A stretch of 30,033 nucleotides of DNA, from NCBI GenBank assembly GCA_002269645.1, contig NIVC01004961.1:1-30033 (forward strand), written 5' to 3'. The stretch is from Macrostomum lignano (Eukaryota). The notes beneath the pieces are model-generated. The model was not told the origin of the DNA, ran no database searches, and saw only the letters and a program-made list of their open reading frames with translations. Below, piece by piece: positions 14,001-30,033 of the stretch (positions within the stretch are counted from its first letter, which is position 1; the number at the start of each line of letters is the position of its first letter). A program made the position numbers and the translations under genes.

Positions 14001-14647
14001 GGAGAGGAGCAGGCGGAACAGTTGGGAGACGGCTTCGTCAGGCGGGCTGGGGAGGCTTCGGCAAATCGGGGAAGAAGAGCAACGACGATGCCGAATCTGA
14101 GGAGGACGATGTCGAATTGTCGGCCCCGACGATGAAAAATGGCGATGCGGCCGAGCCGGAACTGTCCGAGGCGGTGTTCGACCGGGTTCTGTGCCACTGC
14201 CTGGCCAAATTCAGCAGTTCTGGCAGCCGTCTGCCCAGCCTGCGTCAGGTGCAACGTCGCCGGCGACAGAATCGGCGCCGACTACGCCGCGCCGCCGAGA
14301 AGATTGCCGTCGCCGCCGCTGCCGTTTCCAAGCCTGCAGTCCCAGCTGAACCCATCGCCCAGCCAGATGATGCGGACGAACTGAACCAATCGCAGCAGAA
14401 TATCGATACGGCCGACACCGAGTCTGATCTGATCGTCGTGTCGGCGACTATGGCCACGCCGCGTGCTGGCGGTAATGGCAGCGAAGACGAGGACGATGAT
14501 GAAGAAGACGACGCGTCTGTCCAGCGTCACAGGCCGGCGAAACGACACGCCAACGGTGAACTGGCCGTGGACCTCGACGAGGAGTCGTCCTGCAGCGGCC
14601 GATCGTCGGTTAACAAGCGGAGCCGGCGTAGAAAAATTGCTGCTTGA
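11071..14647 (+). CDS. WDR75: WD repeat-containing protein 75 (UTP17/NAN1, SSU processome t-UTP subunit); 2 exons, one frame break near the C-terminus
   Basis: Exon 1 11071-12828 (GT at 12829), exon 2 from 13182 (ttccag|), phase 0. Motifs HRAAVRDIQASPNSEVQLVSCGMDGRLAVWNY, LQWHFRPVSGLTYASDGCALYSGGEEAVLVKW and RAFLPRLG match WDR75/Utp17 as I recall it. Main frame stops at 14135; the acidic/basic tail is in the -1 frame (13982-14647). Start codon inferred. Confidence 0.85.
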
Positions 14648-14880
14648 ACGTGAATGAACCTATGACCTTTATTGACCTGGCACGATTTTGCTGTCTGTTT
14701 GTTATTGTCGGCACGTCATACGACATTTCTCTGCGCTAGATTCGCTCACTGATGAATCATTGCGGATTGGACAAAAATTAAATCGGTATGATAATTGAGC
14801 GGGAAAAACAGAAGCAACCGCTCTCGAATCATGCGTACTCTCTTTGGCCCTCAATTTCTGTCGGCATTTAGCATTGGAAT

Positions 14881-14886
14881 AATAAA
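14881..14886 (+). promoter_or_regulatory. Candidate polyadenylation signal for WDR75
   Basis: AATAAA about 235 nt after the stop, followed by T-rich sequence. Confidence 0.45.
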
Positions 14887-15846
14887 ATCGCTGCTGCGTT
14901 TCAATTGTCTTCTCTGTTTTTATTTTTTAAGGGTTTGACATCTCATAGTTTGTTTTAGGTTAGAGCACAGATGCTAAAATAACTTTATGGGCCACTCGGG
15001 CATATATAATCAGTAAAACAACTTTCTACTTTTCAGTTCAGTAGCGAAGAAGAATACATAAGCTATTTTATAAAACATAGACAGCTGAAACGACTCTGAT
15101 AAGTTTAGAAGCCCAAAGCTTGCAGGCGTAATCAGCTTGCTAATTGGTTCAGCAATAATGTACATTAGCCAGTCCACTGAAATGTACATGGCAGCTTTAG
15201 GCTGGAATTCCGAGAACGGCAAAAAATTGGGGTGGGGCGGGGGTAGTGTGGAAAGGCGCGGTTGGAGGGTTTAAGCTTGTGGTAAGAGCCTTGTCTTTAA
15301 TAATACATTAAAATGCTTCTGTTAAACTTATTACTAACAGTAGCTTACACGCAAATGTGCTGAGTGGCCCATCTAGTTATTCTAGTATTTGTGAGTTAGT
15401 GGCAGTTTATAGGTTCACTTGGATTGGAATATTTCGCTTTATAGATTGTTTTTCGCTACATATCGTTAATTCTAGTTACACCAATGAGGTTAATAACTGA
15501 ATGAAGGTATTCCAGATTTGGACAGAATTTTCCTCTTTTCATCTTGTTGAATATTTGAGCTGAGTTTTACGCCGAGGCGTTGATCGAATGTCGAATTTTT
15601 CATTTTCGCAACCTTAGTTAGCTTTTCTCGCTTCAACTGACTAAGCTGTCAGCCTTAAACAATTAGCTCCCTTCCCTGCCTCAAACAAGAGTTCGAATTG
15701 ACAAATGTAGTTTTTTTGTTAATCTACACTGTTTCAGGCGACAGATTTCAATCAATAAGCCGATAATGAGCTACATATACTACTAATATGCACTAGCCTC
15801 GGTTCAATCTAACAAATAAAAAGTAGCACAATCTGAACTGTCAAGA

Positions 15847-18800
15847 ATGAGAGTGCCAGCCGTGCAGCACAGTGGACAGCCAGTTGCTGGTCAGAGATCG
15901 GATGTTCAATGCATATTTTATTGCATATTCCATCACGAGGCTGGGCCCAAAATCGAGGTGCAAGAGCCGGCGATTTCATAGTGAAGGAAAGCTTTGACAA
16001 GGTCAGCCGCTATCTGATTACTAAGACGGATTTTGACAATCGATTCATCTGGTTAGACGCGTTTGGATCCCGGATTATGGGCTGTGCTCAGTGCATCGAG
16101 GATAAGCGGTATAAACGGAACGCTATGCACTTTAACATCGGCCTGGTTATCAGTATGGACTGTCAGGTTGGAATCTGCACTATTGCTATGCCTTTTGTCT
16201 TTTGGTTTGAAAAGTTCTGTTTGGACCACTGATACTAGAATAACCAGATAATTAAATTTGTGAAAAAATCGGAGCATCTACTTTTTCAGTAGTTTGTGCG
16301 CAGTGTCATTTCAAAATTAAATTTGGCAACTAAAATTTCCTTTCCTTCTTTGGAAGCATATGTGATTAATAAATGAACAACAGACATTTAACTCCATGTA
16401 CACAAGTGAACGCAACACAAACGAAACTCATCCTAAGGGGCAGGCCCAATCTAGCTCAGCCAATGAGAGAGCAGTAAAAAGAGAGATCAAAGTCAGACAG
16501 ACGTAACTCAGCGTGGGGGGCAGGCTTAATCTAGCTCAGCCAATGAGAGAGCAGTAAGGAGAGAGACCAAAGTCAGACAGACGTAACTCAGCGTGGGGGG
16601 CAGGCTTAATCTAGCTCAGCCAATGAGAGAGCAGTAAGGAGAGAGACCAAAGTCAGACGCAAGCAGGCAGGATGATTTTTCAACGAGCCAACGGTTACCC
16701 CTACAAATACAAAAAAAGTTAAATTAAGAGACCTCCTACTAACAAAAGTAACAAAAATAATTAAAATTGAATCTCTTGTGCGTGCACAAATGGTTTCTAA
16801 TACAAGAGAGGGCTCGGGGATCGGCAACTCCGCTATCTATCCGACCCTCTGGTCCATTGAAACTTCGTGGTAATAGCAATCCGTTAGGGTTTATGCCGAT
16901 TCTACTGTCAACTCTCCACTCACGACTTCACTCTTATCTACTTTCCTTTCTTGTCTTCCTTCTCATTTCTTCTCTGATCTGGGCCGCATCCTTGTGATGG
17001 ATTCCTTATCTGGCCCGTTTATCGACCCCTGGTCTAGCTGAAGTTGCTACTATTAGCAGTATGTTAAACCCTTTTTGTTCACCCGTAGGTGCCAGTCAAA
17101 TACGAGCTGATTGTGAGAAAGCTTGGCCGCTACTTTCACAGCCTGGAGGTTGAGACCGCATTCCTATCCGACCCGGACGCCCAGACCAAACTGCTTCCTG
17201 TACTGACCAGCATTCGAGCCAGTCTTAACGGGCCCGGCTCCTGCAAGCTGCAGGTGTTGCCAGGCAGATCTTTGGAGCTCTTTCTGAAACCGGCCGCGCC
17301 TTTAGAGGCCGCCGCAATGCCGCAGGATTTTGAGGTTTGTTTATCTGCCTTGCTGATCGATTGCTACTTATTTAAATGCCATATTAATACTGTTTACCAA
17401 CTACTGGTCCCTGTGTGTCACTAATTATCTAGTACTGTTCTCTTAAATGTCAACTACTGTGACGAATTGATTGCACCAATGTCTGCTTCCTGAAGCTGTC
17501 ACCAGCATCTGACACTATCATCTGTCACCAGCATCTATCACCATCATCTGTCACCAGCATCTATCACCATCATCTGTCACCATCATCTGTCACCAGCATC
17601 TGTCACCATCATCTGTCACCAGCATCTGTCACCATAACAACAACAACAACAGAGTACGCTGCCAGATCACAAAAGCAGCGTCAGATGGCGCGCTTCAAAG
17701 CTTGGGCGCGAACAAAAGCCGCACCGCCGGCAGAGTCCGGGGCGCCGGCGTCAGCCAGCAGACAGTCGACGTAGCGCCGAGTCCTCGCCTGTCCCCGCCG
17801 GTAGGGTGCCTGCAACGTAAGTAGCAGCACCTCCTGCACCGGCTCCGGGCAGTAGGCCTCGGCGCGGATGACGTGGCCTGCCAGCTGGAGTCGCCGACGG
17901 CGCAGCAGATCGCTAGGACGGGCCAGGCCGGCGCGATGATAGAGCGCCGTGTTGGTGACTCGCTCGTTGCCGATCTTGAAGGCGGCGCGCAGCAGGCCAG
18001 CGTGCGCCGCGTCGACTTGAGCCTCGAGCGAGTCTGTCAGCGTCCAGTTCTCGGCGTTGTATAACAGGACGGTCTCGATCACCGCCTGGAACAGCGCCGC
18101 CCTCTGGCGGTCCGGTAGGGCCTCGGACTGCAGGACTGACCTTATAGAACGAAAGGCAGCCCAAGCAAGTCCTCGGCGACGCCGCAGATCCTCGCGGACG
18201 TCGGGAACCAGACCGCCGAGGTAGACGAACTGCTGACATCTTGGAAGCTCACTCGCCTGTCCGTCAGCGCCTCGGCAGAAGATTGCAGCCTCGGTGTCGT
18301 CCGGCACGCATAGCACGACGGTCTTCTGCGTGTTGACCACCAGGCCGACGCTCGCCGCAACGGCAACCAGCCTATCCAGCTGTCGTTGGGCGCCCTCGAC
18401 GGTCGAGGACAGCAGGGCGAGGTCATCGGCGTAGCCAAGCACGCTGAGCCGTCTCTCCGGTTGGCGTCGACCCACGCGTCGCCGCAGCAGGAAGCCGTCG
18501 TCGTTGGAAGGCAGAGCAGTCCGTAGCACCCAGTCAAGCACCAGAATAAACGGCGCTAGCGTATCTCCCTGGAGCACCCCGGAGGATGTCTCGAAGAAAT
18601 CCGATAGGCCGTCTGGTGTTGAGACAGCAGCCGTCGTGCCGTGGTACAGCGCCATGACAGCAGAAATCAGCAGCTCTGGCACGTTGTACGCACGGAGCAC
18701 CTCTGGGAGCGCGTCCCTCACGACCGAGTCGAAAGCCTTCCTGAAATCGACGAAGATCAGGATCAGGGTCAACTGGCGGATGCGCGCCTCCTCGATGACT

Positions 18801-21788
18801 CGTCGAAGAGCCAGGATCTGCGTCACTGTGCCGCGATGGGGCCGGAATCCGTTCTGCTCAGGTCGCAGGTACGGGTCCAGCACAGGCTGTAACCGCGATA
18901 GCAGCATGCGGTTGAACAGCTTCGCGGCGCAGGACTCACCATCGTCGCCATCGACAGATCCCCGACAGATCCCGAGTCCCGACAGATCCCCGACAGATCA
19001 CCATCGACAGATGTCACCATCATCTGTCACCAGCATCTGTCATCAGCATCTGTCACCAGCATCTGTCACCAGCATCTGTCACCAGCATCTGTCACCATCA
19101 TCTGTCACCATCATCTGTCACCAGCATCTATCACCATCATCTGTCACCATCATCTGTCACCAGCATCTGTCACCATCATCTGTCACCAGCATCTGTCATC
19201 AGCATCTGTCACCATCATCTGTCACCAGCATCTGACACTATCATCTGTCACCATCATCTGTCAGTCACCATCATCTGTCACCAGCATCTGTCATCAGCAT
19301 CTGTCACTATCATCTGTCACCAGCATCTATCACCATCATCTGTCACCATCATCTGTCACCAGCATCTGTCACCATCATCTGTCACCAGCATCTGTCACCA
19401 TCATCTGTCACCAGCATCTGTCATCAGCATCTGTCACCAGCATCTGTCACCAGCATCTGTCACCATCATCTGTCACCATCATCTGTCACCAGCATCTATC
19501 ACCATCATCTGTCACCATCATCTGTCACCAGCATCTGTCACCAGCATCTGTCACCAGCATCTGTCACCATCATCTGTCACCAGCATCTGTCATCAGCATC
19601 TGTCACCATCATCTGTCACCAGCATCTGACACTATCATCTGTCACCATCATCTGTCAGTCACCATCATCTGTCACCAGCATCTGTCATCAGCATCTGTCA
19701 CTATCATCTGTCAACAGCATCTGTCACCAGCATCTGTCACCAACATCTGTCACCATCATCTGTCACCAGCATCTGTCATCAGCATCTGTCACCAACATCT
19801 GTCACCATCATCTGTCACCAGCATCTGTCATCAGCATCTGTCACTAGCATCTGTCACCAGCATCTGTCATCAGCATCTGTCACTATCATCTGTCAACAGC
19901 ATCTGTCACCAGCATCTGTCACCAACATCTGTCACCAGCATCTGTCACCATCATCTGTCACCATCATCTGTCACCAGCATCTGTCACCAGCATCTGTCAC
20001 CATCATCTGTCATCATCATCTGTCACCATCATTTGTCACCATCATCTGTCACTAGCATCTGTCACCAACATCTGCCACCAGCATCTGTCACCATCATCTG
20101 TCACCATCATCTGTCACCAGCATCTGTCACCATCATCTGTCACCAACATCTGCCACCAGCATCTGTCACCATCATCTGTCACCATCATCTGTCACCAGCA
20201 TCTGTCACCAGCATCTGTCACCAGCATCTGTCACCATCATCTGTCACCAGCATCTGTCACCATCATCTGTCACCAGCATCTGTCATCAGCATCTGTCACC
20301 AGCATCTGTCACCAGCATCTGTCACCATCATCTGTCACCATCATCTGTCACCAGATCTGTCATCTGTCACCATCATCTGTCAGTCACCATCATCTGTCAC
20401 CAGCATCTGTCACCATCATCTGTCAGTCACCATCATCTGTCACCAGCATCTGTCACCATCATCTGTCACCAGCATCTGTCACTATTATCTGTCACCATCA
20501 TCTGTCACCAGCATCTGTCACCATCATCTGTCACAGCATCTGTCACCAGCATCTGTCACTAGCATCTGTCACCAACATCTGCCACCAGCATCTGTCACCA
20601 TCATCTGTCACCAGCATCTGTCACCAGCATCTGTCACCATCATCTGTCACCAACATCTGCCACCAGCATCTGTCACCATCATCTGTCACCATCATCTGTC
20701 ATCATCATCTGTCACCAGCATCAAACATCAGCATCTGTCACCGATTCAATCCGGCAGGTGCCAGTTCTGGTTGGCCGGTCTCCGCCAGTCAAGACAGACA
20801 TTGTCACCAGCCTAATCCTGCCCTACATTGACGGAGTCTCGCACGTCGCTAAAATAGCCTGCATGGCCGACGTAGACAAGAGCATAGTGAAAACCTGCCT
20901 GCAGAATCTCTGCAGCCTGCACGCTGTCAGATTCCTGCCGCTGACCCTGTACTCTGACTCTTACGCCTGTCTGACCGGACTGCATAGGCTCGTGTCCGAT
21001 CCCAGACTGGGCCAGCTCTGCCAGGAAGCTGTCACACTGTCTAACAAGGTGATGCTCGCAATTCATCTGCGCTCTACACCCGGGTATCTAGAGATCTCCA
21101 GCGAATCATATCCCATCTCTATAGAATCCTATTTCATCTCTGTAGAATCCGTTTTCATCTCTATTGAATCTGATCCCATCTCTATAGAAACCGATCCCAT
21201 CTCTATAGAATAATATCCCATCTCTATAGAATCTGATCCCATCTCTATAGAATCTGATCGCATCTCTATAGAATCCTATCCATCTCTATAGAATCCCATC
21301 TTATCTCTATAGAATCTGCCCCTATCTCTTGAGAATCTGTCCCCTATCTCTAGAGAATCGATAGGCACATGTCTAGAGGATGTCTACTCATCCTCAATCG
21401 CCCACCACCCCGCTCCCGAACGCAGGAGCGAACGCCCAGCATCGGGCGGCTGTTCCGCTTATTCTCGTGCATGTCGCCGGGCTCCACTCTGAAAGACCTG
21501 CTGACCCTGCACAGCGGCCTGGCAGCGAATGTAGACGTGCTCAGATTAGTGCAGTTCGGCCTGCTGCACTGCCTAATCCGGCGGGTTAGCGCCTATCCGG
21601 TTCGGCTGCACTGGAGTCAAACCGGATCGGCTGACTGCTCTGTCGGGCTAAGAGGAACCGACCAGCTGAACCGGCTGCTAGACGGATACCGGTCTATGGA
21701 TGAGATCTGCGCCAGCACGGGACTGAGCCGGCAGATGGTTGAAGAACGACTAGAACGGGATTCACTTGTGGTGGTTATAAGACGTTGA
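15847..21788 (+). CDS. NPRL2: GATOR1 subunit NPRL2 (nitrogen permease regulator 2-like); 4 exons, 1-nt frame break in exon 1
   Basis: Exons 15847-16166, 17089-17334, 20758-21048, 21426-21788; all GT-AG, phase 0. Joined protein: VQCIFYCIFHHEAGPKIEVQEP/DFIVKESFDKVSRYLITK..IMGCAQCIEDKRYKRNAMHFNIGLV..YELIVRKLGRYFHSLEVE..DFE|VPVL..ILPYIDGVSHVAKI..RLVQFGLLHCLIRRVSAYPV..SMDEICASTGLS..ERLERD, colinear with NPRL2 from end to end. Confidence 0.93.
16441..16658 (+). repeat. 80-bp tandem repeat x~2.7 in NPRL2 intron 1
   Basis: CAGGCTTAATCTAGCTCAGCCAATGAGAGAGCAGTAA.. recurs at 16441, 16521 and 16601. Confidence 0.92.
17495..17635 (+). repeat. Left arm of 13-bp satellite CATCTGTCAC(CAG/CAT)
   Basis: About 10 units, same family as 19013-20742. 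Confidence 0.95.
17636..18937 (-). mobile_element. 5'-truncated non-LTR retrotransposon, RTE-clade-like, antisense in NPRL2 intron 2
   Basis: Uninterrupted frame 18937-17681 with RT motifs EQNGFRPHRGT, FVDFRKAFDSV, GVLQGDTLAP, GYADDLALL, FVYLG and the C-terminal RRRRLQLAGHVIR; 3' UTR stem-loop ACGCTGC-12nt-GCAGCGT (17656-17681); (GTT)5 tail at 17650-17636. Confidence 0.93.
19013..20742 (+). repeat. 13-bp satellite CATCTGTCAC(CAG/CAT), about 130 units
   Basis: Seen directly; ends about 15 nt before the NPRL2 exon 3 acceptor (20756-20757). Confidence 0.99.
21085..21375 (+). repeat. ~20-bp minisatellite with palindromic core TCTATAGA (CCCATCTCTATAGAATC..) in NPRL2 intron 3
   Basis: About 14 imperfect copies. 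Confidence 0.92.
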
Positions 21789-22445
21789 GTAGCTTTTATT
21801 GCATTGCTTGCCATTGATTTGATACATCTGCCAATAGCTGTTGGCGCAGTCAGGTTGTCTATGGTTAGAAGCATCAAGCTCGAAATGAGTAGCTATAGAC
21901 TGTAAATTCGATATGATGCAATCGTATATATTACTGACATAACTGCTGAGAGTAGCTGGTCGTAGAAATCTTGTGGTTAAAAAAATGTCTACGGCAAAGC
22001 CCACTATTTTTCGACAAAGATATACTACTAATTAAGTAGTTAATTTAGGCATTTTAATAAGAAATCGAGTTTCGATATCTCTATATTAAAATATATGCCT
22101 GTGGATCTCTGTTTGTGCATTGTTCTGCGGACTTCTGAGGAAGCTTTTAATGTTGCTTTTAATATTCAATGATGTACACTATAGTTTGACAGTAATTCGA
22201 TATAAGTCATCGATGATTTATTGTGTCTCTTAGTTTTATCTTATAAGAATTAACTTTGTACTCTTAAGTAAGCACTTGTACTGCACTGCGTGACGCAGTC
22301 AAATTAGATTACAGATAAAAAATATAACTGAAGTGTTCTCAATCTGCTCACTTGTGCTTTCAATTTGATGAACAAGCATTAATGTTAGTTGCCTTCTTTT
22401 TGTCTTGATTTTTGATATTTTTACATATTTTTATCATACTCGTAT

Positions 22446-23140
22446 TAGCCCAGATCAGCGCCTTTGCCCCCCCCCCACTAATGTACAAATATAGCCCTGA
22501 TCGGATCTAATTGGCTGGCGCCTCCCCCATCCCCACTAATGTATAATATAGCCCTGATCGGATCTAATTGGCTGGCGCCTCCCCCATCCCCACTAATGTA
22601 CAAATATAGCCCTGATCCTATTTAATTAGCTGGCGCCTCTGCCCCCCCACTAATGTACAAATATAGCCCTGATCGGATCTAATTGGCTGGCGCCTCCCCA
22701 TCCCCACTAATGTACAAATGTAGCCCTGATCCTATTTAATTAGCTGGCGCCTCTGCCCCCCCACTAATGTACAAATATAGCCCTGATCGGATCTAATTGG
22801 CTGGCGCCTCCCCATCCCCACTAATGTACAAATGTAGCCCTGATCCTATTTAATTAGCTGGCGCCTCTGCCCCCCCCACTAATGTACAAATATAGCCCTG
22901 ATCGGATCTAATTGGCTGGCGCCTCCCCCATCCCCACTAATGTATAAATATAGCCCTGATCCTATTTAATTAGCTGGCGCCCCTCCCCCACCCCCAGTAA
23001 TGTACTAAATACGAGTATAGCCCTGATCCAATTTAATATAGCTGGCGCCTCCCCCACCCCCACTAATGTACAAATATAGCCCTGATCGGATCTAATTGGC
23101 TGGCGCCTCCCCCATCCCCACTAATGCACATATATAGCCC
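22446..23140 (+). repeat. ~57-59-bp tandem repeat with two alternating variants, between NPRL2 and CISD3
   Basis: CCACTAATGTACAAATATAGCCCTGATC-(GGATCTAATTG or CTATTTAATTA)-GCTGGCGCCTC.., about 11-12 copies. Confidence 0.97.
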
Positions 23141-23222
23141 AAGTCTTCACTTTTTAGCTTAACTGTCAATGCTTGTAGCCTTTAGGTGCCCGCTTGATTA
23201 ACTGCTAATTCTATCCCAACAG

Positions 23223-23660
23223 TACAGCCTTGGTCGCCTCCTCCAACATGCTCGCCTTCAGGCCGACAATTCAAAGGAGCCGCCTTCGCCGGCAGTCCCT
23301 GCGCCTGCCTGTCCCACATTCGGGCCGTCCAACGTACGCGGCAGCAGCCTCCGGCCCGGCCAGTCGCTGCGCTGGTGCGCATGCGGCCTCAGCCAATCGC
23401 AGCCCTGGTGCGACGGGTCTCACAGGCGGGCGCCGCCAGGGTACAAGCCCTTAGCCTGGACTGTGCCTGATAAGCCGCAGGCTCTCTACCAGCTTTGCAA
23501 TTGCAAGTACACGAAGAGCCCACCGCTGTGCGACGGCAGTCATACCAATCTGCCTTGCCAACTGATGGCTAAACAGGCCGATTGCAAAGACAAATCTAAT
23601 CACGCACAAGATTTAACATTGTGCAGCAGTTGCGGCTGGTGTCCAAAGTTTCAGTTCTGA
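23223..23660 (+). CDS. CISD3: CDGSH iron-sulfur domain protein 3 (MiNT/Miner2-type, two CDGSH 2Fe-2S motifs); no in-frame ATG
   Basis: Frame open from the acceptor at 23221-23222: YSLGRLLQHARLQ..LRPGQSLRWCACGLSQSQPWCDGSH..QLCNCKYTKSPPLCDGSH..CGWCPKFQF*. Two tandem CDGSH motifs and no TM helix define the CISD3 class. First in-frame ATG (23565) lies after both motifs. Confidence 0.92.
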   Translation, partial: YSLGRLLQHARLQADNSKEPPSPAVPAPACPTFGPSNVRGSSLRPGQSLRWCACGLSQSQPWCDGSHRRAPPGYKPLAWTVPDKPQALYQLCNCKYTKSPPLCDGSHTNLPCQLMAKQADCKDKSNHAQDLTLCSSCGWCPKFQF

Positions 23661-23714
23661 TGCGTAGCGGTGTAGCAGTATTTTTGTCTCTGATTTGCAC
23701 AGAATAATGGAGTA

Positions 23715-24465
23715 GGGAGAGCAGAGAAAAGAGAGGGGAGCCGAGGGAAGAGAGGGAGCAGAGAGAAGAGAAGGGAGGCAGAGGAAAGAGAGGGGAGCGG
23801 AAGGAAGAGAAGGGAGGCAGAGGAAAGAGAGGGGAGCAGAGAGAAGAGAAGGGAGCAGAGGGAAGAGAGGGGAGCAGAGAGAAGAGAAGGGAGCAGAGGA
23901 AAGAGAAGGGAGGCAGAGGAAAGAGAGGGGAGCGGAAGGAAGAGAAGGGAGGCAGAGGAAAGAGAGGGGAGCAGAGAGAAGAGAAGGGAGCAGAGGGAAG
24001 AGAGGGGAGCAGAGAGAAGAGAGGGAGCAGAGAGAAGAGAAGGGAGCAGAGGAAAGAGAGGGGAGCAGAGGGAAGAGAGGGGAGCAGAGGGAAGAGAGGG
24101 AGCAGAGAGAAGAGAGGGGAGCAGAGAGAAGAGAAGGGAGCAGAGGGAAGAGAGGGAGCAGAGAGAAGAGAAGGGAGCAGAGGGAAGAGAGGGAGCAGAG
24201 AGAAGAGAGGGGAGCAGAGAGAAGAGAGGGGAGCAGAGGGAAGAGAGGGAGCAGAGAGAAGAGAGGGGAGCAGAGAGAAGAGAAGGGAGCAGAGGGAAGA
24301 GAGGGAGCAGAGAGAAGAGAAGGGAGCAGAGGGAAGAGAGGGAGCAGAGGAAGAGCAGAGAGGGAGCAGAGAGAAGAGAAGGGAGCAGAGGGAAGAGAGG
24401 GAGCAGAGGAAAGAGAGGGGAGCGGAAGGAAGAGAAGGGAGCAGAGGCAAGAGAGGGGAGCAGAT
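23715..24465 (+). repeat. Polypurine minisatellite (GGGAGCAGAGAGAAGAGA / GGGAGCAGAGGGAAGAGA variants)
   Basis: About 750 nt, almost T-free on the + strand; ~17-21-bp units. Confidence 0.97.
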
Positions 24466-24846
24466 GGTTCTGAAAGCCTGTGAAGCCCTGATCATAATCC
24501 CATTTAGCAATAACTCGAACGAGATCCAGATGTCCTAATCCAGAAAAGAGCAATTCAAATTTAATGCTGATTCAAATTCAGTACCTTTGCTATAATGAAA
24601 CGATTTTATGAGGTTTGTTTTCATTAATAATTCAATAAAATATGGTGCCTTTACACAGATTTGATTTACAATTGCTTATATCGAATTCAGACTTTAAGCC
24701 TCTTAATAATTTCTGATAGTTTGTTAGCGATTTATAACCTGGAACTTGATTTATGAGTAAGGCTAAAGTGTTAGTTACATGACTCATCAATGCGAGCATA
24801 TTTTAGTAACATTAGTGCACGTGCACTATGACACACCTGTCCATAG

Positions 24847-26253
24847 GCTACCGGATTAAGCGGCGGCATTGTCCGCCTGTCTCGCCGATCAGTTAACGCA
24901 GGCCAAAGCGTTTCCCGCGTGGCAATTCGTCTGCTATCGTCTGGCAGTCAGCAGCAACAACAACAGCAGGAGCAACAGCAGCAGTCTCGGCCGCCGCTTC
25001 ATCGCGACCAGAGCTCGCCCAGCTTCTTGGCCGAATTGCCAGCCTGGATTTGGCCAAGCTGACGCCGGAGACTCGGGCCCTGCTAGATCGGATCGTTCGA
25101 GTTGATCATGCTGGTGATTTAAACAGTTTGCTGCTTGTGTGTATTTGTGCAACTTTATCGATTCCTATAATGGTCGCAATCTGCAGTTCACAGTTATATT
25201 CCGCCATTTATTAATGCATTTATAACTATTGACATGATTAATTGAAACTAGATAAATCCGTCCCTACATGTAGTTTCAATAAATCCACCTCTGACTTAGA
25301 TAAATCCGCCCCTGTTTTAGATAAATCCGCCCCTGGTTTATATAAATCCGCCCCTGGTTTAGATAAACCTGCCTCTGGTTTAAATAAATCCGCCCCTGGT
25401 TTAGATAAACCTGCCCCTAGTTTAGATAAATCCGCCCCTGGTTTATATAAACCTGCCCCTAGTTTAGATAAATCCACCCCTGGTTTAAATAAAACTGCCT
25501 CTAGTTTAGATAAATCCGACCCTGGTTTGGATAAATCCGATCCTGGTTTAGATAAATCCGCCCATAGTTTAAATAAATTAGCCTCGATTCCCTGTAAATC
25601 CGCCCCTAGATTAAATAAATCTGCCCCTAGTTTGCATCAATCCGCCCCTGCTGTACATGTTCTCAGTTAAATCTCCCTCTAGTTCGAACAGATCCACCTG
25701 CACCCCAGAGAAACCCGCTACCAGTTCCGATAGATCTGCTCCTATTTCAGTTAAATCCGCCTCAACTTCCGCAGGCGAATTCGGCGCCGACCGGATCTAC
25801 GCCGGCCAGCTAGCTGTGCTGGGCGGCACCCCAACAGGCCCGCTGATCCGCCACATGCACGAGCAGGAGCAGGACCATCTGGCCGCGTTCGAAGCCCTCA
25901 TCCCGGCGTTGCGCGCCCGGCCCACCGTGCTGATGCCGTTCTGGCGTGTGGCCGGCTTCGCTTTGGGCGCCGGCACCGCTTTAATTGGCAAAGAGGCCGC
26001 CATGGCCTGCACTGTGGCTGTTGAAGCCGAGATTCAGGAACACTACAATGCTCAGCTGCGCAGCCTGCTAGCCGATAATCCCGAGCTACACGCCGACTTA
26101 ATGCGGGTCATCGCTCGATTCCGCGACGAGGAGGCCGAGCATCACGACACTGGACTACGCGAGGACGCTGAGTCTGCGCCCGCTTATCCGGCTTTGTCCG
26201 CCGCCATTCGAGCTGGCTGTCGGGTTGCCATCTTCTTGTCGGAGCGGATCTGA
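24847..26253 (+). CDS. COQ7: 5-demethoxyubiquinone hydroxylase COQ7/CLK-1; 2 exons, 5' end uncertain (24847 or 24948), no ATG
   Basis: Exon ending LLDRIVRVDHA-G at 25113 (GT 25114, phase 1) joins exon 25775-26253 to give HAGEFGADRIYAGQLAVLG..HMHEQEQDHL..RPTVLMPFWRVAGFALGAGTALIGKEAAMACTVAVEAEIQEHYNAQLR..FRDEEAEHHDTG..AIFLSERI*, with the COQ7 di-iron E/H ligands. Confidence 0.95.
25250..25740 (+). repeat. 21-bp minisatellite (TTAGATAAATCCGCCCCTGGT) filling the COQ7 intron
   Basis: About 19 close copies, then decay toward the acceptor; explains the LDKSAP ORF. Confidence 0.95.
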
Positions 26254-26263
26254 ACTAATTCAC

Positions 26264-26269
26264 AATAAA
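26264..26269 (+). promoter_or_regulatory. Candidate polyadenylation signal for COQ7
   Basis: AATAAA (in AATAAATAAA) about 10 nt after the stop codon. Confidence 0.55.
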
Positions 26270-26934
26270 TAAATTCGCAAAAGATATTGGTAAATAGCCT
26301 TAGAACGATAAAATGCCATAGAAATGCCGGGGAAATTCCATGGAAATGCCGAGGGAATTCCAGAAATTCCAAAAATATCCGCAGAAATTCCAAGAAAATT
26401 GATTTTTTCAAAACCCCACAGATATGCCATTAAAAATCACACGTTTCGTTTACCCAGTTACATGTTGTAGAGAAAGAGTTGTAGTCCAGTGGGTTCGGAG
26501 TCGAACGGTCTAAATTTGCTCCTTGAATATTTGAATCCTTGAATATTTGGCTATATTTTGTTAACTTACAAGTAGGTATTCCTGTGTAAGCAAACTGACC
26601 CACAATAATGAAACCTTTGCTTAGCTTAAACTTAGTTCAAACCGGAAAGTCACCCAGTGCTTTTTATTTGAATTTCTATCTGACTGTTAACCATCTGCTT
26701 TTCTTCGAAGCATTTTGAACAGTTTTGAAATTGTACTTCATTTTCAATAGCTTTGTTATCAGGCTTGTCATAGCCTGATGCTTAAATATACAAATATTAA
26801 TCTGCAAAGGAGTTGTTTATTAAATCGTATTTTTCATTTTCAATTTTGTATCAACAAGAAATAATCTGTCAACATCTAGAATGACGCTCAAACTCCCTCT
26901 AGAATCTCATTCAATCGCCTTAATAGAGAATAGC

Positions 26935-27500
26935 CCTCAATGTCCTTTGATAATCGCCCTCGATCTCCTTTGATAATCGCCCTCAATCTTCATTGATAAT
27001 CGCCCTTAATCTCCATTGATTAATCGCCCTCAATCTCCATTGATTAATCGCTCTCAATCTCCATTGATAATCGCCCTCAATCTCCATTGATAATCGCCCT
27101 CAATCTCCATTGATAATCGCCCTCAATCTCCATTGATAATCGCCCTCAATCTCCATTGATAATCGCCCTCAATCTCCATTGATAATCGCCCTCAATCTCC
27201 ATTGATAATCGCCCTCAATCTCCATTGATAATCGCCCTCAATCTCCATTGATAATCGCCCTCAATCTCCATTGATAATCGCCCTCAATCTCCATTGATAA
27301 TCGCCCTCAATCTCCATTGAGAATCGCCCTCAATCTCCATTGATAATCGCCCTCAATCTCCATTGATAATCGCCCTCAATCTCCATTGATAATCGCCCTC
27401 AATCTCCATTGATAATCGCCCTCGATCTCCATTGATAATCGCCCTCAATCTCCATTGAGAATCGCCCTCGATCTCCATTGATAATTCCCCTGGATCTCCT
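26935..27500 (+). repeat. 23-bp minisatellite AATCTCCATTGATAATCGCCCTC, about 24 copies
   Basis: Near-perfect core at 27060-27420 with degenerate edges; no spacers. Confidence 0.98.
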
Positions 27501-27548
27501 TTGAAACAGCAAAACATAAGTAAATATTCCAGCAGTTTCAGCAGTTGA

Positions 27549-28458
27549 ATGCGGTGCACCAGACAGATCAGCAGCGGCTGTGTGGCCGAACTTGTCAGCG
27601 GTCTGGCTAACTCGGACATCATTCGCAAAGAGAAGCACATTCTTGTTGGGTACGCAATAAAAATCTAACAGTTATATAAAATGTCAAGTTTCTATCCCCG
27701 CTTGCTAGCTAATGCGATGATCATTGCAGACGGTTAAAACAATTCCCAGCAGCTGAGGTTCAGTCGCACTGCCAACAGTTGCTATGCAGCAATGCGAGCT
27801 TAGAGACGCTCGTGTCCGCGTTCGAGTACCTGTTGCAAGGAAATTTCGGTCAGTACTATTAATTAGTATTGCTTATATGGCTAGCCCATCCTGTGCTTGG
27901 TCACAAAGAAAATTAGCATACTGACCACAATGACAGATATGGAGATATGGAGACGCTAAGAAAGGCTTGAACTTTGATATCCCAGCAACTCTCCGTTAAT
28001 CCTCACTGTCATCATCTCGGCATCGGGTGTGGAGCCCTTTGGATTGGGGCGGAGCAGCTCCGCGGTTCCCCTGGTTCGATTCCACGCCCATTTACACCCA
28101 TGAATGCCAGCCCCCATGGCGCAGAGTACATACCCAGATAAATGCTGGCACCCATTTTTATAGCTGGGTGAACTAAAGCAACCAGAGTTACCATGGTAAG
28201 TGTCTTGCTCAAGGACACAAATAGTTCCAGTGGGATCGGGAATTGAACCCCCGACCTTCAAGTCGTGAGTCTGCAACTGCAACCCCATGTAAACAGTATA
28301 TAAGTATTTGTGGAGTCTTAGCATTCTTCATTGGGTTGTACTAACTGGAGACAGCCCGTATCCATTATCATCGACACTTAAATATCGTTGTTTTTAGGCT
28401 TGCCCGATACTTTCTGTCACAAACTGCTGGATAAAACTGTAATAGACATTTCTCATAG
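27549..28458 (+). CDS. Unidentified protein-coding gene, first three exons (continues beyond the window)
   Basis: Exons 27549-27649 (GTACGC, phase 2), 27730-27848 (tgcag| ..|GTCAGT, phase 1), 28398-28458 (tttttag| ..|GTAAGT, phase 2) splice into one open frame: MRCTRQISSGCVAELVSGLANSDIIRKEKHILVGRLKQFPAAEVQSHCQQLLCSNASLETLVSAFEYLLQGNFGLPDTFCHKLLDKTVIDISH. Confidence 0.7.
27950..28300 (-). mobile_element. tRNA-derived SINE, antisense in intron 2 of the unidentified gene
   Basis: Minus strand B-box GGTTCAATTCC (28249-28239), then GTGTCCTTGAGCAAGACACTT and GTTCACCCAGCTATAAAAATGGGTGCC, resembling conserved central domains of widespread metazoan SINE superfamilies. Ends approximate. Confidence 0.7.
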
Positions 28459-28544
28459 GTAAGTTCATAAAAATCTTATTTTGTATATATTAAAGCTTGT
28501 AAAAGGGTAGAAAATGGTTAATAGGGAATAAATAAGGAATAATA

Positions 28545-30033
28545 GGGAAGAAGGGGAAGCAGAGGGAAGAAAGGGAATCAGAAGGAAGAAAGAGGATCAG
28601 AAGGAAGAAAGGGGATCAGAAGGAAGAAAGAGGATCAGAAGGAAGAAAGAGGATCAGAAGGAAGAAAGGGGATCAGAAGAAAGAAAGGGGATCAAGAGAA
28701 GAAAGGGGATCAAAGGGAAGAACGGGGATCAGAAGGAAGAACGGGGATCAAAGGGAAGAAAAGGGATCAAAGGGAAGAAAGGGGATCAAAGGGAAGAAAG
28801 GGGATCAAAGAGAAAAAAGTGGATCAAAGGGAAGAACGGGGATCAGAAGGAAGAAGGGGGGATCAAAGGGAAGAAAAGGGATCAAAGGGAAGAAAGGGAT
28901 CAAAGGAAGAAAGGGGATCAAAGGGAAGAAAGGGGATCAGAAGGAAGAAGGGGGATCAAAGGGATAAAAAGGAATCAAAAGAAAAAGAAAGGGGATCAAA
29001 GGGAAGAAAGGGGATCAAAGAGAAAAAAGTGGATCAAAGGGAAGAACGGGGATCAGAAGGAAGAAGGGGATCAAAGGGAAGAAAAGGGATCAAAGGAAAG
29101 AAAGGGGATCAGAAGGAAGAAAGGGGATCAGAAGGAGGAAAGGGGATCAGAAAGAAGAAGGGAGATCAAAGGAAAGAAAGGGGATCAAAAGAGAGGAAAG
29201 GGGATCAAAGGGAAATAACGGGGATCAGAAGGAAGAAGGGGGATCAAAGGGAAGAAAGGGATCAAAGAGAGGAAAGGGGATCAAAGGGAATAACGGGGAT
29301 CAGAAGGAAGAAGGGGATCAAAGGGAAGAAAGGGATCAAAGGGAAGAAAGGGGATCAAAGGGGAGAAAGGGAAGAAAAGGGATCAAAGGGAAGAAAGGGG
29401 ATCAGAAGGAAGAAGGGGGATCAAAGGGAAGAAAAGGGATCAAAGAGAAGAAGGGGATCAAAGGGATAACGGGGATCAGAAGGAAGAAGGGGGATCAAAG
29501 GAAGAAAAGGGATCAAAAGGGAAGAAAGGGGATCAAAGGGGAGAAAGGGAAGAAAAGGGATCAAAGGGAAGAAAGGGGATCAAAGGGGAGAAAGGGAAGA
29601 AAAGGGATCAAAGGGAAGAAAGGGGATCAAAGGGAAGAAAGGGGATCAAAGGGGAGAAAGGGAAGAAAAGGGATCAAAGGGAAGAAAGGGGATCAAAGGG
29701 GAGAAAGGGAAGAAAAGGGATCAAAGGAAGAAAGGGGATCAAAGGGAGAAAGGGAAGAAAGGGGATCAAAGGGGAGAAAGGGAAGAAAGGGGATCAAAGG
29801 GAGAAAGGGAAGAAAAGGGATCAAGGGAAGAAAGCGGATCAAAGGGAAGAAAGCGGATCAGAAGGAGGAAAGGGGATCAAAGGGAAGAAAGGGGATCAAA
29901 GGGAAGAAAAGGGATCAAAGGGAAGAGAAAAGGGATCAAAGGAAGAAAGGGGGATCAAAGGGAAGAAAGGGGATCAGAAGGAAGAAATGGGATCAGAGGG
30001 AAGAACGGAGGGGATTAGAAGGAAGAAAGCTTG
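28545..30033 (+). repeat. Purine-rich ~19-21-bp minisatellite GGGATCAAAGGGAAGAAAG, runs to the window end
   Basis: About 75 units; pyrimidines almost confined to the GATC core; lies in intron 3 of the unidentified gene. Confidence 0.98.

What the first reader, a model, noticed from the sequence alone, without database searches (positions are those of the whole stretch)
23199..23270. CISD3 has no start codon of its own; its frame opens exactly after a splice acceptor (spliced-leader AUG candidate)
Seen: in-frame TAA at 23199-23201, branch-like CTAAT at 23205-23209, pyrimidine tract, CAG at 23220-23222, then phase-0 TAC AGC CTT GGT CGC.. open through both CDGSH motifs, with no in-frame ATG until 23565. 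Established: flatworm SL RNAs end in AUG, and in Schistosoma mansoni that AUG can act as initiator; CISD3 is a mitochondrial matrix protein needing an N-terminal presequence. Inference: SL trans-splicing here gives M-YSLGRLLQHARLQADNSKEP.., a plausible presequence, so translation and import would depend on trans-splicing. Alternatives: an unseen upstream cis exon, or ATG 23248 (MLAFRPTIQRSRLRRQSL, also presequence-like) plus a 1-nt indel.
Basis: partly seen in the sequence, partly recalled or inferred. Interest (0 to 1): 0.78.

Follow-up and report, generated by a model that had tools for sequence, protein, structure and literature searches.

The report
Flatworm gene borrows its start codon

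Summary
The window is the whole contig NIVC01004961.1 of Macrostomum lignano assembly Mlig_3_7. The reading frame holds two perfect CDGSH motifs. Its only in-frame ATG (23565) lies after both.

The public, transcript-based annotation of three identical gene copies carries a 5'-partial, 132-codon CDS. It starts at 23262, directly after CTTCAG (23256-23261). That hexamer matches the published M. lignano SL acceptor motif [T/C]TNCAG exactly.

The M. lignano SL ends in ...TTGCATG. The annotation pipeline cut transcripts at SL-read peaks and called ORFs on SL-trimmed sequence. An SL-AUG-initiated gene would therefore look exactly like this. The SL AUG is in frame and gives M-ADNSKEPP... (133 aa).

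That N-terminus is not presequence-like, and neither are those of the closest homologues, so the import argument is not supported. Three contigs agree base for base, which argues against the 1-nt indel idea. No credible upstream ATG exon was found.

I could not reach any SL-containing reads, so the splice junction is inferred and not observed. SL-AUG initiation is established in Schistosoma and acknowledged for Macrostomum. This is one more example of a known kind, of modest interest.

The parts
22473..23140 (+). 57-bp tandem repeat array (about 11 copies) filling most of the spacer between the NPRL2 stop (21788) and the CDGSH gene. It is part of the presumed outron or intercistronic region.
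   Evidence: TRF; sequence.
23199..23201 (+). In-frame TAA that closes the frame upstream. No ATG lies between it and the CDGSH motifs.
23205..23209 (+). CTAAT, a branch-point-like pentamer. It lies 13 nt before the AG at 23221-23222 and 52 nt before the AG at 23260-23261.
   Evidence: Its function is inferred only.
23217..23222 (+). It does not match [T/C]TNCAG and is not the annotated 5' end. Possible minor site.
23248..23250 (+). ATG in the +1 frame, opening an arginine-rich ORF that ends at 23454. It lies upstream of the annotated mRNA 5' end, so trans-splicing at 23262 would remove it.
23240..23261 (+). C/T-rich tract (15 of 20 pyrimidines) ending in CTTCAG. This is the most likely SL trans-splice acceptor, and the annotated mRNA/CDS begins at the next base.
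   Evidence: Motif from PMC8629364. The motif occurs at 0.0015 per position in the window.
23262..23660 (+). CDS of the CDGSH (CISD3-like) protein: 132 codons plus TGA. It is annotated 5'-partial in GenBank. With the SL AUG it gives a 133-aa protein, MADNSKEPP...CPKFQF.
   Evidence: Pfam; PDB.
23376..23423 (+). First CDGSH 2Fe-2S motif, CACGLSQSQPWCDGSH.
   Evidence: regex C.C..[ST]...P.CDG[SAT]H.
23496..23543 (+). Second CDGSH 2Fe-2S motif, CNCKYTKSPPLCDGSH.
23565..23567 (+). The only in-frame ATG of the gene, downstream of both motifs. It cannot be the functional start.
23580..23657 (+). C-terminal Cys-rich tail (CKDKSNHAQDLTLCSSCGWCPKFQF), shared with the nearest homologues and absent from canonical CISD3.
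   Evidence: Alignment.
23714..24464 (+). 19-bp (GA-rich) tandem repeat array between the CDGSH gene and COQ7. An AATAAT at 23703 sits just before it.

Best explanation
The gene is a two-CDGSH-motif (CISD3-like) iron-sulfur protein gene of Macrostomum lignano. Its pre-mRNA has no usable initiation codon.

The 35-nt spliced leader (CGGTCTCTTACTGCGAAGACTCAATTTATTGCATG) is trans-spliced onto the acceptor CTTCAG|GCC at 23261|23262. This discards the outron, which contains the 57-bp repeat array, the in-frame TAA and the out-of-frame ATG at 23248. The SL's terminal AUG then sits in frame directly before GCC GAC AAT. It is the first and only AUG ahead of the ORF, and translation gives a 133-aa protein, M-ADNSKEPPSPAVPAPACPTFGPSNVRG...

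Translation of the protein therefore depends on trans-splicing.

Shown:
- the sequence anatomy;
- the frame relationship;
- the identity of three gene copies;
- that the annotated 5' end coincides with an exact acceptor motif.

Inferred:
- that the annotated 5' end is an SL junction. This follows from how the annotation was made. No SL reads were seen;
- that ribosomes start at the SL AUG, by analogy with Schistosoma mansoni.
For: 1. The window is contig NIVC01004961.1 of M. lignano Mlig_3_7.
2. The SL ends in ATG, followed by the donor GTAAG. The top motif at SL acceptors is [T/C]TNCAG (PMC8629364).
3. GenBank carries a 132-aa CDS without Met on three contigs. It starts at window 23262, exactly after CTTCAG. 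That motif occurs only 44 times on the + strand of 30,033 nt.
4. The ORF is open back to 23202. A 5'-partial ORF starting at 23262 therefore means the transcript model itself starts at 23260-23262.
5. The annotation pipeline (TBONE) cut transcripts at peaks of SL-trimmed reads, and TransDecoder was run on the trimmed sequences (PMC5730564).
6. The WDR75 gene in the same window shows the same behaviour. Its database protein starts PPTKE... at 11074, directly after a genome-encoded, SL-like ...TTTTTTGCATG. Only the Met is missing.
7. The SL AUG is in frame at 23262, and the chimeric mRNA's first AUG is the SL's.
8. There is no other in-frame ATG before both CDGSH motifs.
9. All residues conserved with homologues lie downstream of 23262.
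10. SL-AUG initiation is documented in flatworms (Cheng 2006, via PMC9851317; PMC12582326; PMC5832876). It is also noted for Macrostomum ('translation start codon', PMC10468722).
Against: - No SL-containing read or cDNA for this gene could be inspected. Exact look-ups of M-ADNSK... and M-YSLGR... products found nothing, and paper supplements had no entry.
- The neighbouring COQ7 CDS is also 5'-partial but does not start after an AG. So 5'-partial starts in this annotation are not always SL junctions.
- TBONE cuts at every SL peak. An additional upstream site at 23223 would be invisible in the final gene model.
- Base composition switches from 40% to 59% GC at about 23223, not at 23262. This also fits a C-rich polypyrimidine tract.
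- Translation from the SL AUG has never been shown experimentally in M. lignano.
Confidence: 0.78

Rival explanations
1. The SL is trans-spliced at CAACAG|TAC (23222|23223), and the SL AUG starts a 146-aa protein, M-YSLGRLLQHARLQADNSKEPP..., whose N-terminal extension acts as a mitochondrial presequence. This could be the main site or a minor alternative to 23262.
For: - The site is in phase 0. It is preceded by CTAAT and a pyrimidine-rich stretch (13 of 20).
- GC content rises at about 23223.
- The 14-residue extension is amphipathic and basic: muH 0.58, first acidic residue at position 16.
- Canonical CISD3s have such N-termini.
- TBONE's cutting would hide an upstream SL peak.
Against: - The annotated mRNA/CDS starts at 23262 on all three copies.
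- CAACAG lacks the T at position -5 of [T/C]TNCAG.
- CTAAT is only 13 nt from this AG.
- The nearest homologues lack presequence-like N-termini.
- The segment 23223-23261 is 67% pyrimidine and reads well as the tract for the 23262 acceptor.
Confidence: 0.1
2. An upstream cis-spliced exon, unannotated or outside the examined stretch, supplies the ATG. 23262 (or 23223) would then be an ordinary cis acceptor.
For: - Flatworm acceptors are often shared between cis- and trans-splicing (PMC12582326).
- The homologue on L006 has an intron just before the conserved YGPC block.
Against: - If the transcript had an upstream exon, a 5'-partial CDS would not begin at this exon's first base.
- A scan of 21789-23261 found 12 ATG...|GT phase-0 candidates. 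None has a GT[AG]AG donor, the longest is 25 codons in AT-rich sequence, and 668 nt of the interval is tandem repeat.
Confidence: 0.05
3. ATG 23248 is the true start, and the assembly has a 1-nt indel between 23250 and about 23300. The protein would begin MLAFRPTIQRSRL... before shifting into the CDGSH frame.
For: - The +1 peptide is strongly presequence-like: net +7 and no acidic residues.
- One-base differences between copies do occur in this assembly. The window's COQ7 copy has CC where three other copies have CCC.
Against: - Three independently assembled contigs are identical from 23200 through the stop.
- There is no homopolymer in the interval.
- ATG 23248 lies upstream of the annotated mRNA 5' end.
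- Arginine-rich alternative frames are expected in 60% GC coding-like sequence.
Confidence: 0.02
4. The 5' end at 23262 is a transcription start or an assembly truncation. The protein would then be made by non-AUG initiation, or not at all (an expressed pseudogene).
For: - COQ7 next door has a 5'-partial CDS that starts at a non-acceptor position.
- A fourth copy, on L001, is clearly degenerate.
Against: - An exact coincidence with CTTCAG| has a chance of about 0.0015 per position.
- Three copies keep both CDGSH motifs and the full ORF intact and identical.
- The only in-frame near-cognate codon before motif 1 is CTG at 23367. Starting there would delete the conserved FGPSNVRG...LRPG block.
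Confidence: 0.05

Closest known systems
Schistosoma mansoni mRNAs that use the SL 3'-terminal AUG as initiator methionine (Cheng, Cohen, Ndegwa and Davis, J Biol Chem 2006; cited in PMC9851317, PMC12582326, PMC5832876)
   Same: - A flatworm SL that ends in AUG.
- An acceptor placed so that the AUG is in frame with a conserved ORF.
- No own AUG that could give a functional protein.
- Translation that depends on trans-splicing.
   Different: - A different species, the free-living macrostomorph M. lignano, and a different gene.
- Here both the junction and the initiation are inferred from annotation and sequence. They were not shown by cDNA or reporter assays.
slORFs, ORFs created by SL addition (slORFfinder, PMC9851317)
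   Same: The start codon is donated by the SL and the ORF continues into the recipient mRNA.
   Different: slORFfinder relies on SL reads plus ribosome footprints. It mostly reports non-canonical NUG starts in nematodes, trypanosomes and Oikopleura. M. lignano was not analysed.
Human CISD3 / MiNT (PDB 6AVJ) and bacterial two-motif CDGSH proteins (PDB 3TBN)
   Same: - Two CDGSH 2Fe-2S motifs in one soluble chain with no transmembrane segment.
- Significant sequence similarity: 6AVJ at E=1.3e-12 and 3TBN at E=3.8e-17.
   Different: - With the annotated start, the M. lignano protein has no presequence-like N-terminus.
- It has an extra C-terminal Cys-rich tail (C-x12-C-x2-C-x2-C), shared with a small clade that includes a jellyfish protein, EukProt entries and metagenome sequences.
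- Localisation is unknown.
M. lignano SL trans-splicing and operons (Wudarski 2017, PMC5730564; Ustyantsev and Berezikov 2021, PMC8629364)
   Same: - The acceptor matches the published motif.
- The gene lies in a same-strand run: WDR75, NPRL2, CDGSH, COQ7, DUF2428.
- Repeat-adjusted spacers are 805 and 457 nt. That is under the 1-kb operon criterion, measured here from stop codon to next CDS start.
   Different: In the passages I searched by keyword, those papers do not discuss use of the SL AUG as initiator or this gene. Operon membership here is inferred, not shown.

Membership tests
SL-AUG-initiated flatworm mRNA (Cheng 2006 type) | The organism has an SL whose exon ends in AUG immediately before the donor site. 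| tested here: met
   The M. lignano SL is CGGTCTCTTACTGCGAAGACTCAATTTATTGCATG, followed by GTAAG (PMC8629364).
SL-AUG-initiated flatworm mRNA (Cheng 2006 type) | SL-containing transcripts join the SL to an acceptor at the 5' end of this mRNA. | tested here: inconclusive
   The evidence is indirect. The GenBank 5'-partial CDS starts exactly after CTTCAG on three contigs, and the pipeline cuts at SL-read peaks. No SL reads or cDNAs could be reached.
SL-AUG-initiated flatworm mRNA (Cheng 2006 type) | The SL AUG is in frame with the conserved ORF at that acceptor. | tested here: met
   The chimeric SL+23262 sequence translates to MADNSKEPP...KFQF*.
SL-AUG-initiated flatworm mRNA (Cheng 2006 type) | No own in-frame AUG can yield the functional protein, and the frame is closed upstream. 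| tested here: met
   TAA at 23199. The first in-frame ATG, at 23565, lies after both CDGSH motifs.
SL-AUG-initiated flatworm mRNA (Cheng 2006 type) | Translation demonstrably starts at the SL AUG. | not testable with these tools
   This needs Ribo-seq, N-terminal proteomics or reporter assays.
CISD3 / MiNT (class of proteins with two CDGSH domains) | Two motifs of the form C-X-C-X2-(S/T)-X3-P-X-C-D-G-(S/A/T)-H in one polypeptide. | tested here: met
   The regex hits residues 40-55 and 80-95 of the 133-aa product. Pfam PF09360 scores 50.2 bits against a cutoff of 29.5, in 2 stretches.
CISD3 / MiNT (class of proteins with two CDGSH domains) | Sequence relationship to solved CISD3. | tested here: met
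   6avj_A at E=1.3e-12, covering both motifs.
CISD3 / MiNT (class of proteins with two CDGSH domains) | An N-terminal mitochondrial presequence. | tested here: inconclusive
   Only crude heuristics were available, with no TargetP or MitoFates. M-ADNSKEPP... has net charge 0, an acidic residue at position 3 and 7 prolines in the first 30 residues, so it is not presequence-like. The alternative M-YSLGRLLQHARLQ is presequence-like. Most of the nearest homologues are not.
CISD3 / MiNT (class of proteins with two CDGSH domains) | A soluble protein with no transmembrane helix, unlike CISD1 and CISD2. | tested here: met
   The maximum Kyte-Doolittle 19-residue mean is 0.15.
Downstream gene of an M. 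lignano operon | A same-strand upstream gene within 1 kb (repeat-adjusted), with the downstream gene SL trans-spliced. | tested here: inconclusive
   From the NPRL2 stop to 23262 is 1473 nt, or 805 nt after subtracting the 57-bp repeat array. The NPRL2 poly(A) site and any polycistronic precursor were not observable.

The most novel reading that the evidence does not exclude
Two SL acceptors lie 39 nt apart (23222|23223 and 23261|23262). Both are in phase with the SL-donated AUG, and both may be used. The choice of trans-splice site would then decide whether the CDGSH protein carries a 13-residue amphipathic, presequence-like extension (YSLGRLLQHARLQ). That would be dual (mitochondrial or cytosolic) targeting set purely by alternative SL trans-splicing, with no genomic start codon at all. 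The adjacent COQ7 gene also lacks an in-frame ATG in its first coding exon. This hints that SL-AUG dependence may be common among nuclear genes for mitochondrial proteins in this species.
Probability: 0.08. Interest if true: 0.55.

Novelty: new member of a known kind. Interest (0 to 1): 0.27.

Why it matters
The result gives a concrete, well-delimited example in the transgenic model flatworm M. lignano of a conserved gene whose translation should depend entirely on SL trans-splicing.

It also explains a class of '5'-partial' CDSs in the public Mlig_3_7 annotation. These are probably complete proteins that lack only the SL-encoded Met. Gene finders and proteome sets that require an ATG will drop or truncate them.

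The case is practical to test, because M. lignano has working transgenesis. It does not open a new mechanism. SL-AUG initiation has been known in flatworms since 2006.

Tried and rejected
1. Direct transcript evidence.
- Exact look-ups of M-ADNSK..., M-YSLGR..., the SL-readthrough VSYCEDSIYCM-ADNSK... and other N-terminal variants in the 15-billion-protein collection found only the two GenBank entries.
- The homology search returned no Macrostomum CDGSH protein at all. Its cluster representative is the 74-aa fragment.
- Supplements of three M. lignano papers held no CISD3, CDGSH or COQ7 entries.

2. Paralogue comparison. The three intact copies are identical, so they carry no information about frame conservation. 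The fourth copy, on L001, is degenerate: its N-terminus and first motif are replaced by repeat-like sequence.

3. Its contig is AT-rich genomic DNA, and the 'start' is an intron read through by a prokaryote-style gene call. The real exon begins at ...tttcag|TATGGACC. I rejected it as evidence.

4. No SL RNA gene is present in the window.

5. The upstream-exon scan found nothing credible.

6. A C-rich polypyrimidine tract explains it equally well.

7. I considered using COQ7 as a second clear SL-AUG case. Its annotated 5' end does not follow an AG, so I report it only as an open side observation.

Full report
**What the window is.**
- A homology search with the COQ7 ORF gave a 100%-identical Macrostomum lignano protein, BOX15_Mlig014096g2.
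- Looking up the annotated CDGSH product showed that the window is the complete 30,033-bp contig NIVC01004961.1 of assembly GCA_002269645.1, Mlig_3_7. Locus L003 equals window 17262-29660 base for base.
- The gene order, all on the + strand, is:
  - WDR75 (about 11.07-14.6 kb);
  - NPRL2 (15.9-21.8 kb), with a reverse-transcriptase ORF on the minus strand in an intron;
  - the CDGSH gene;
  - COQ7 (about 24.87-26.25 kb).
- On the sister contigs a DUF2428-domain gene follows COQ7.

**Checking the observation.**
- Every coordinate is correct: TAA 23199-23201, CTAAT 23205-23209, CAG 23220-23222, then phase-0 TAC AGC CTT GGT CGC.
- The frame is open to TGA at 23658-23660.
- The first in-frame ATG is at 23565.
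- ATG 23248 is in the +1 frame.
- The ORF contains two exact CDGSH motifs, at 23376-23423 and 23496-23543.
- It passes Pfam zf-CDGSH at 50.2 bits against a cutoff of 29.5.
- It matches solved CDGSH proteins, including human CISD3 (6AVJ) at E=1.3e-12.
- The only in-frame ATG lies after both motifs, so the gene has no usable start codon of its own.
- This is not an assembly slip. Two further contigs, NIVC01000580.1 (L004) and NIVC01000579.1 (L002/L005), are identical over the CDS and the 62 nt before it; in the 160 nt upstream that one search printed, L004 is identical and L005 differs at a single base (window 23140), outside the acceptor region.
- A fourth copy, on NIVC01001608.1 (L001), is degenerate. 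Its N-terminal part and first motif are replaced by repeat-like sequence.

**Where the mRNA starts.**
- GenBank carries a 132-residue product without Met, ADNSKEPP...KFQF (P0241). It is present on three contigs at window 23262-23660.
- The base before 23262 ends the hexamer CTTCAG.
- The frame is open back to 23202. An ORF caller would therefore start a 5'-partial ORF at 23262 only if the transcript model itself begins at 23260-23262.
- The Mlig_3_7 annotation was built as follows (PMC5730564):
  - SL sequences were trimmed from reads;
  - the trimmed reads were mapped;
  - the TBONE pipeline cut transcriptional units at the resulting peaks;
  - TransDecoder was then run on the cut sequences.
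- The published SL is CGGTCTCTTACTGCGAAGACTCAATTTATTGCATG, followed by the donor GTAAG. The top motif at 21,754 SL acceptor regions is [T/C]TNCAG, placed right at the junction (PMC8629364).
- CTTCAG fits that motif.
- The motif occurs 44 times on the + strand of the window, about 0.0015 per position. An accidental 5' end at exactly this point is therefore unlikely.
- The 20 nt before the AG are 15/20 pyrimidines.
- Joining the SL to 23262 puts its terminal AUG in frame. It is the first AUG of the chimeric mRNA, and it gives MADNSKEPPSPAVPAPACPTFGPSNVRG..., 133 aa.

**A control inside the same window.**
- The database WDR75 protein of M. lignano (P0243) begins PPTKETDELK. That corresponds to window 11074.
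- The genome immediately upstream reads TCAATTTTTTGCATG, a 14/15 match to the SL 3' end, including an ATG.
- The pipeline evidently treated this as SL, trimmed it including the ATG, and produced a 5'-partial CDS that lacks only the Met.
- This is what the CDGSH entry looks like, except that its ATG is not in the genome.

**Limits of the inference.**
- I could not see a single SL-containing read or cDNA for this gene.
- 5'-partial starts in this annotation are not always SL junctions. COQ7's CDS starts at ATT (window 24869), preceded by GCGGCGGC.
- TBONE cuts at every peak, so an additional SL site at 23223 would leave no trace in the final model.
- GC content rises at about 23223: 0.40 before it, 0.59 for 23223-23261 and 0.60 for the CDS. 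That segment is 67% pyrimidine and serves well as the tract of the 23262 acceptor.
- I put the trans-splice junction at 23262 at about 0.85, and SL-AUG initiation overall at about 0.78.

**The presequence argument.**
- With the annotated start, the N-terminus has Asp at position 3 and Glu at position 7. Net charge is 0 and there are 7 prolines in the first 30 residues. It is not presequence-like by simple charge and hydrophobic-moment measures.
- The nearest homologues are a jellyfish 'CISD3-like' protein, EukProt entries and metagenome sequences, at 45-55% identity.
  - They form a subgroup with an extra C-terminal Cys-rich tail.
  - They have net-negative N-termini, and three of the four are acidic within the first eight residues.
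  - More distant, canonical bilaterian CISD3s have basic N-termini free of acidic residues.
- The premise that this protein must carry a presequence is therefore not secure, and its localisation is open.
- No dedicated predictor was available.

**Rivals.**
- Upstream ATG exon. A scan of 21789-23261 gave 12 ATG...|GT phase-0 candidates. None has a GT[AG]AG donor, and the longest is 25 codons in AT-rich sequence. 668 nt of the interval is a 57-bp tandem repeat. An upstream exon is also incompatible with a 5'-partial CDS that starts at the exon's first base.
- ATG 23248 plus an indel. Three contigs agree and there is no homopolymer. That ATG lies upstream of the annotated 5' end. Its arginine-rich +1 peptide is what a 60%-GC sequence tends to encode. 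One-base copy differences do exist elsewhere: the window's COQ7 has CC where three other copies have CCC. I therefore keep this rival at about 2% and not zero.
- Non-AUG initiation. The only in-frame near-cognate codon before motif 1 is CTG at 23367. Starting there would remove the conserved FGPSNVRG...LRPG block.

**Comparison with what is known.**
- All reported flatworm SLs end in AUG.
- In Schistosoma mansoni the AUG is in frame with 28% of trans-spliced mRNAs, and more than 40 cDNAs need it for initiation (Cheng et al. 2006, as summarised in PMC9851317; also PMC12582326 and PMC5832876).
- In the keyword passages I read, the M. lignano trans-splicing papers do not discuss SL-AUG use or this gene.
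- The finding is therefore a new, reasonably well supported example of a known mechanism, with the acceptor corrected. It is not a new kind of system.
- Its practical value is twofold. It shows how to read the many 5'-partial CDSs of the Mlig_3_7 annotation. It also provides a compact test case in a flatworm where transgenesis works.

**Verdict.**
- Observation: confirmed.
- Interpretation: partly supported. SL-donated AUG, yes. The acceptor is at 23261|23262, not 23222|23223. The presequence and import reasoning is not supported. The indel alternative is unlikely.
- Novelty: new member of a known kind.
- Interest: about 0.27.

Noticed in passing
window 11059-11073 (WDR75 start): TCAATTTTTTGCATG is a 14/15 match to the 3' end of the M. 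lignano SL (TCAATTTATTGCATG). Its ATG is the natural start of WDR75. The database WDR75 protein (P0243) begins PPTKE... at 11074, right after this ATG, and no AG acceptor is present there. It is either a fossil of SL sequence fixed in the genome, for example through a retroposed trans-spliced mRNA, or a chance match that fooled SL trimming. The similarity does not extend beyond the 15-mer.
   Followed up: partly
window 24829-25110 (COQ7 first coding exon): The first coding exon of COQ7 (IVRLSRRSVNAGQSVSRVAIRLLSS..., presequence-like) has no in-frame ATG either, and it is annotated 5'-partial from ATT at 24869. The in-frame TAG at 24844-24846 is part of an acceptor-like ccatag|GCT. An SL AUG joined there would be in frame and give M-ATGLSGGIVRLSRRSV... 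The only upstream ATG (24829) is in the +1 frame and runs into a TAA. The 5' region is identical in four copies. This could be a second SL-AUG-dependent gene next door.
   Followed up: partly
window about 25009: The window's copy of COQ7 exon 1 has CC where three other contigs have CCC. This shifts the frame, and its annotated CDS is accordingly cut to 181 aa starting at 25047, against 241-247 aa elsewhere. It is either a real inactivating difference between copies or an assembly error.
   Followed up: partly
L001 7195-7310 (NIVC01001608.1): The fourth copy of the CDGSH gene is degenerate. About 164 nt that encode the N-terminus and the first CDGSH motif are replaced by about 116 nt resembling the upstream 57-bp repeat. 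It is annotated as a 74-aa partial product, BOX15_Mlig014691g1.
   Followed up: partly
window 11000-26253 and L002: Five unrelated genes (WDR75, NPRL2, CDGSH, COQ7, DUF2428-domain gene) lie head to tail on one strand. The spacers consist largely of tandem repeats. Repeat-adjusted spacers of 805 and 457 nt fall under the published 1-kb operon criterion.
   Followed up: no
window 17681-18907 (minus strand) and 19012-20742: A 408-aa reverse-transcriptase ORF (RVT_1) lies antisense inside an NPRL2 intron. Next to it is a 13-bp tandem repeat of about 132 copies.
   Followed up: no
window 23580-23657; alignment A1: The protein and its nearest homologues share a C-terminal Cys-rich tail of the form C-x(8-12)-LC-x2-CGW. 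The M. lignano version has four Cys: C-x12-C-x2-C-x2-C. Canonical CISD3 lacks this tail. It may be an extra metal site that defines a distinct CDGSH subfamily.
   Followed up: no
L006 600-640 (Logan SRR9332370 contig): The best Logan homologue's 'MYSILFQ' N-terminus is an artefact of a prokaryote-style gene call reading through an intron from a GTG. The real exon starts at tttcag|TATGGACCATG, so that organism has an intron just before the conserved YGPC block.
   Followed up: yes
PDB hits for window 23262-23657: Besides human CISD3 and a bacterial CDGSH protein, the protein matches chains named 'Iron-binding zinc finger CDGSH type protein' in PDB entries 6z1p and 7w5z, plus a weaker match to a chain named cytochrome c oxidase subunit 13 (9fq7). 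From my own recollection, not checked here, 6z1p and 7w5z are large ciliate mitochondrial complexes; if so, some two-motif CDGSH proteins are structural subunits.
   Followed up: no
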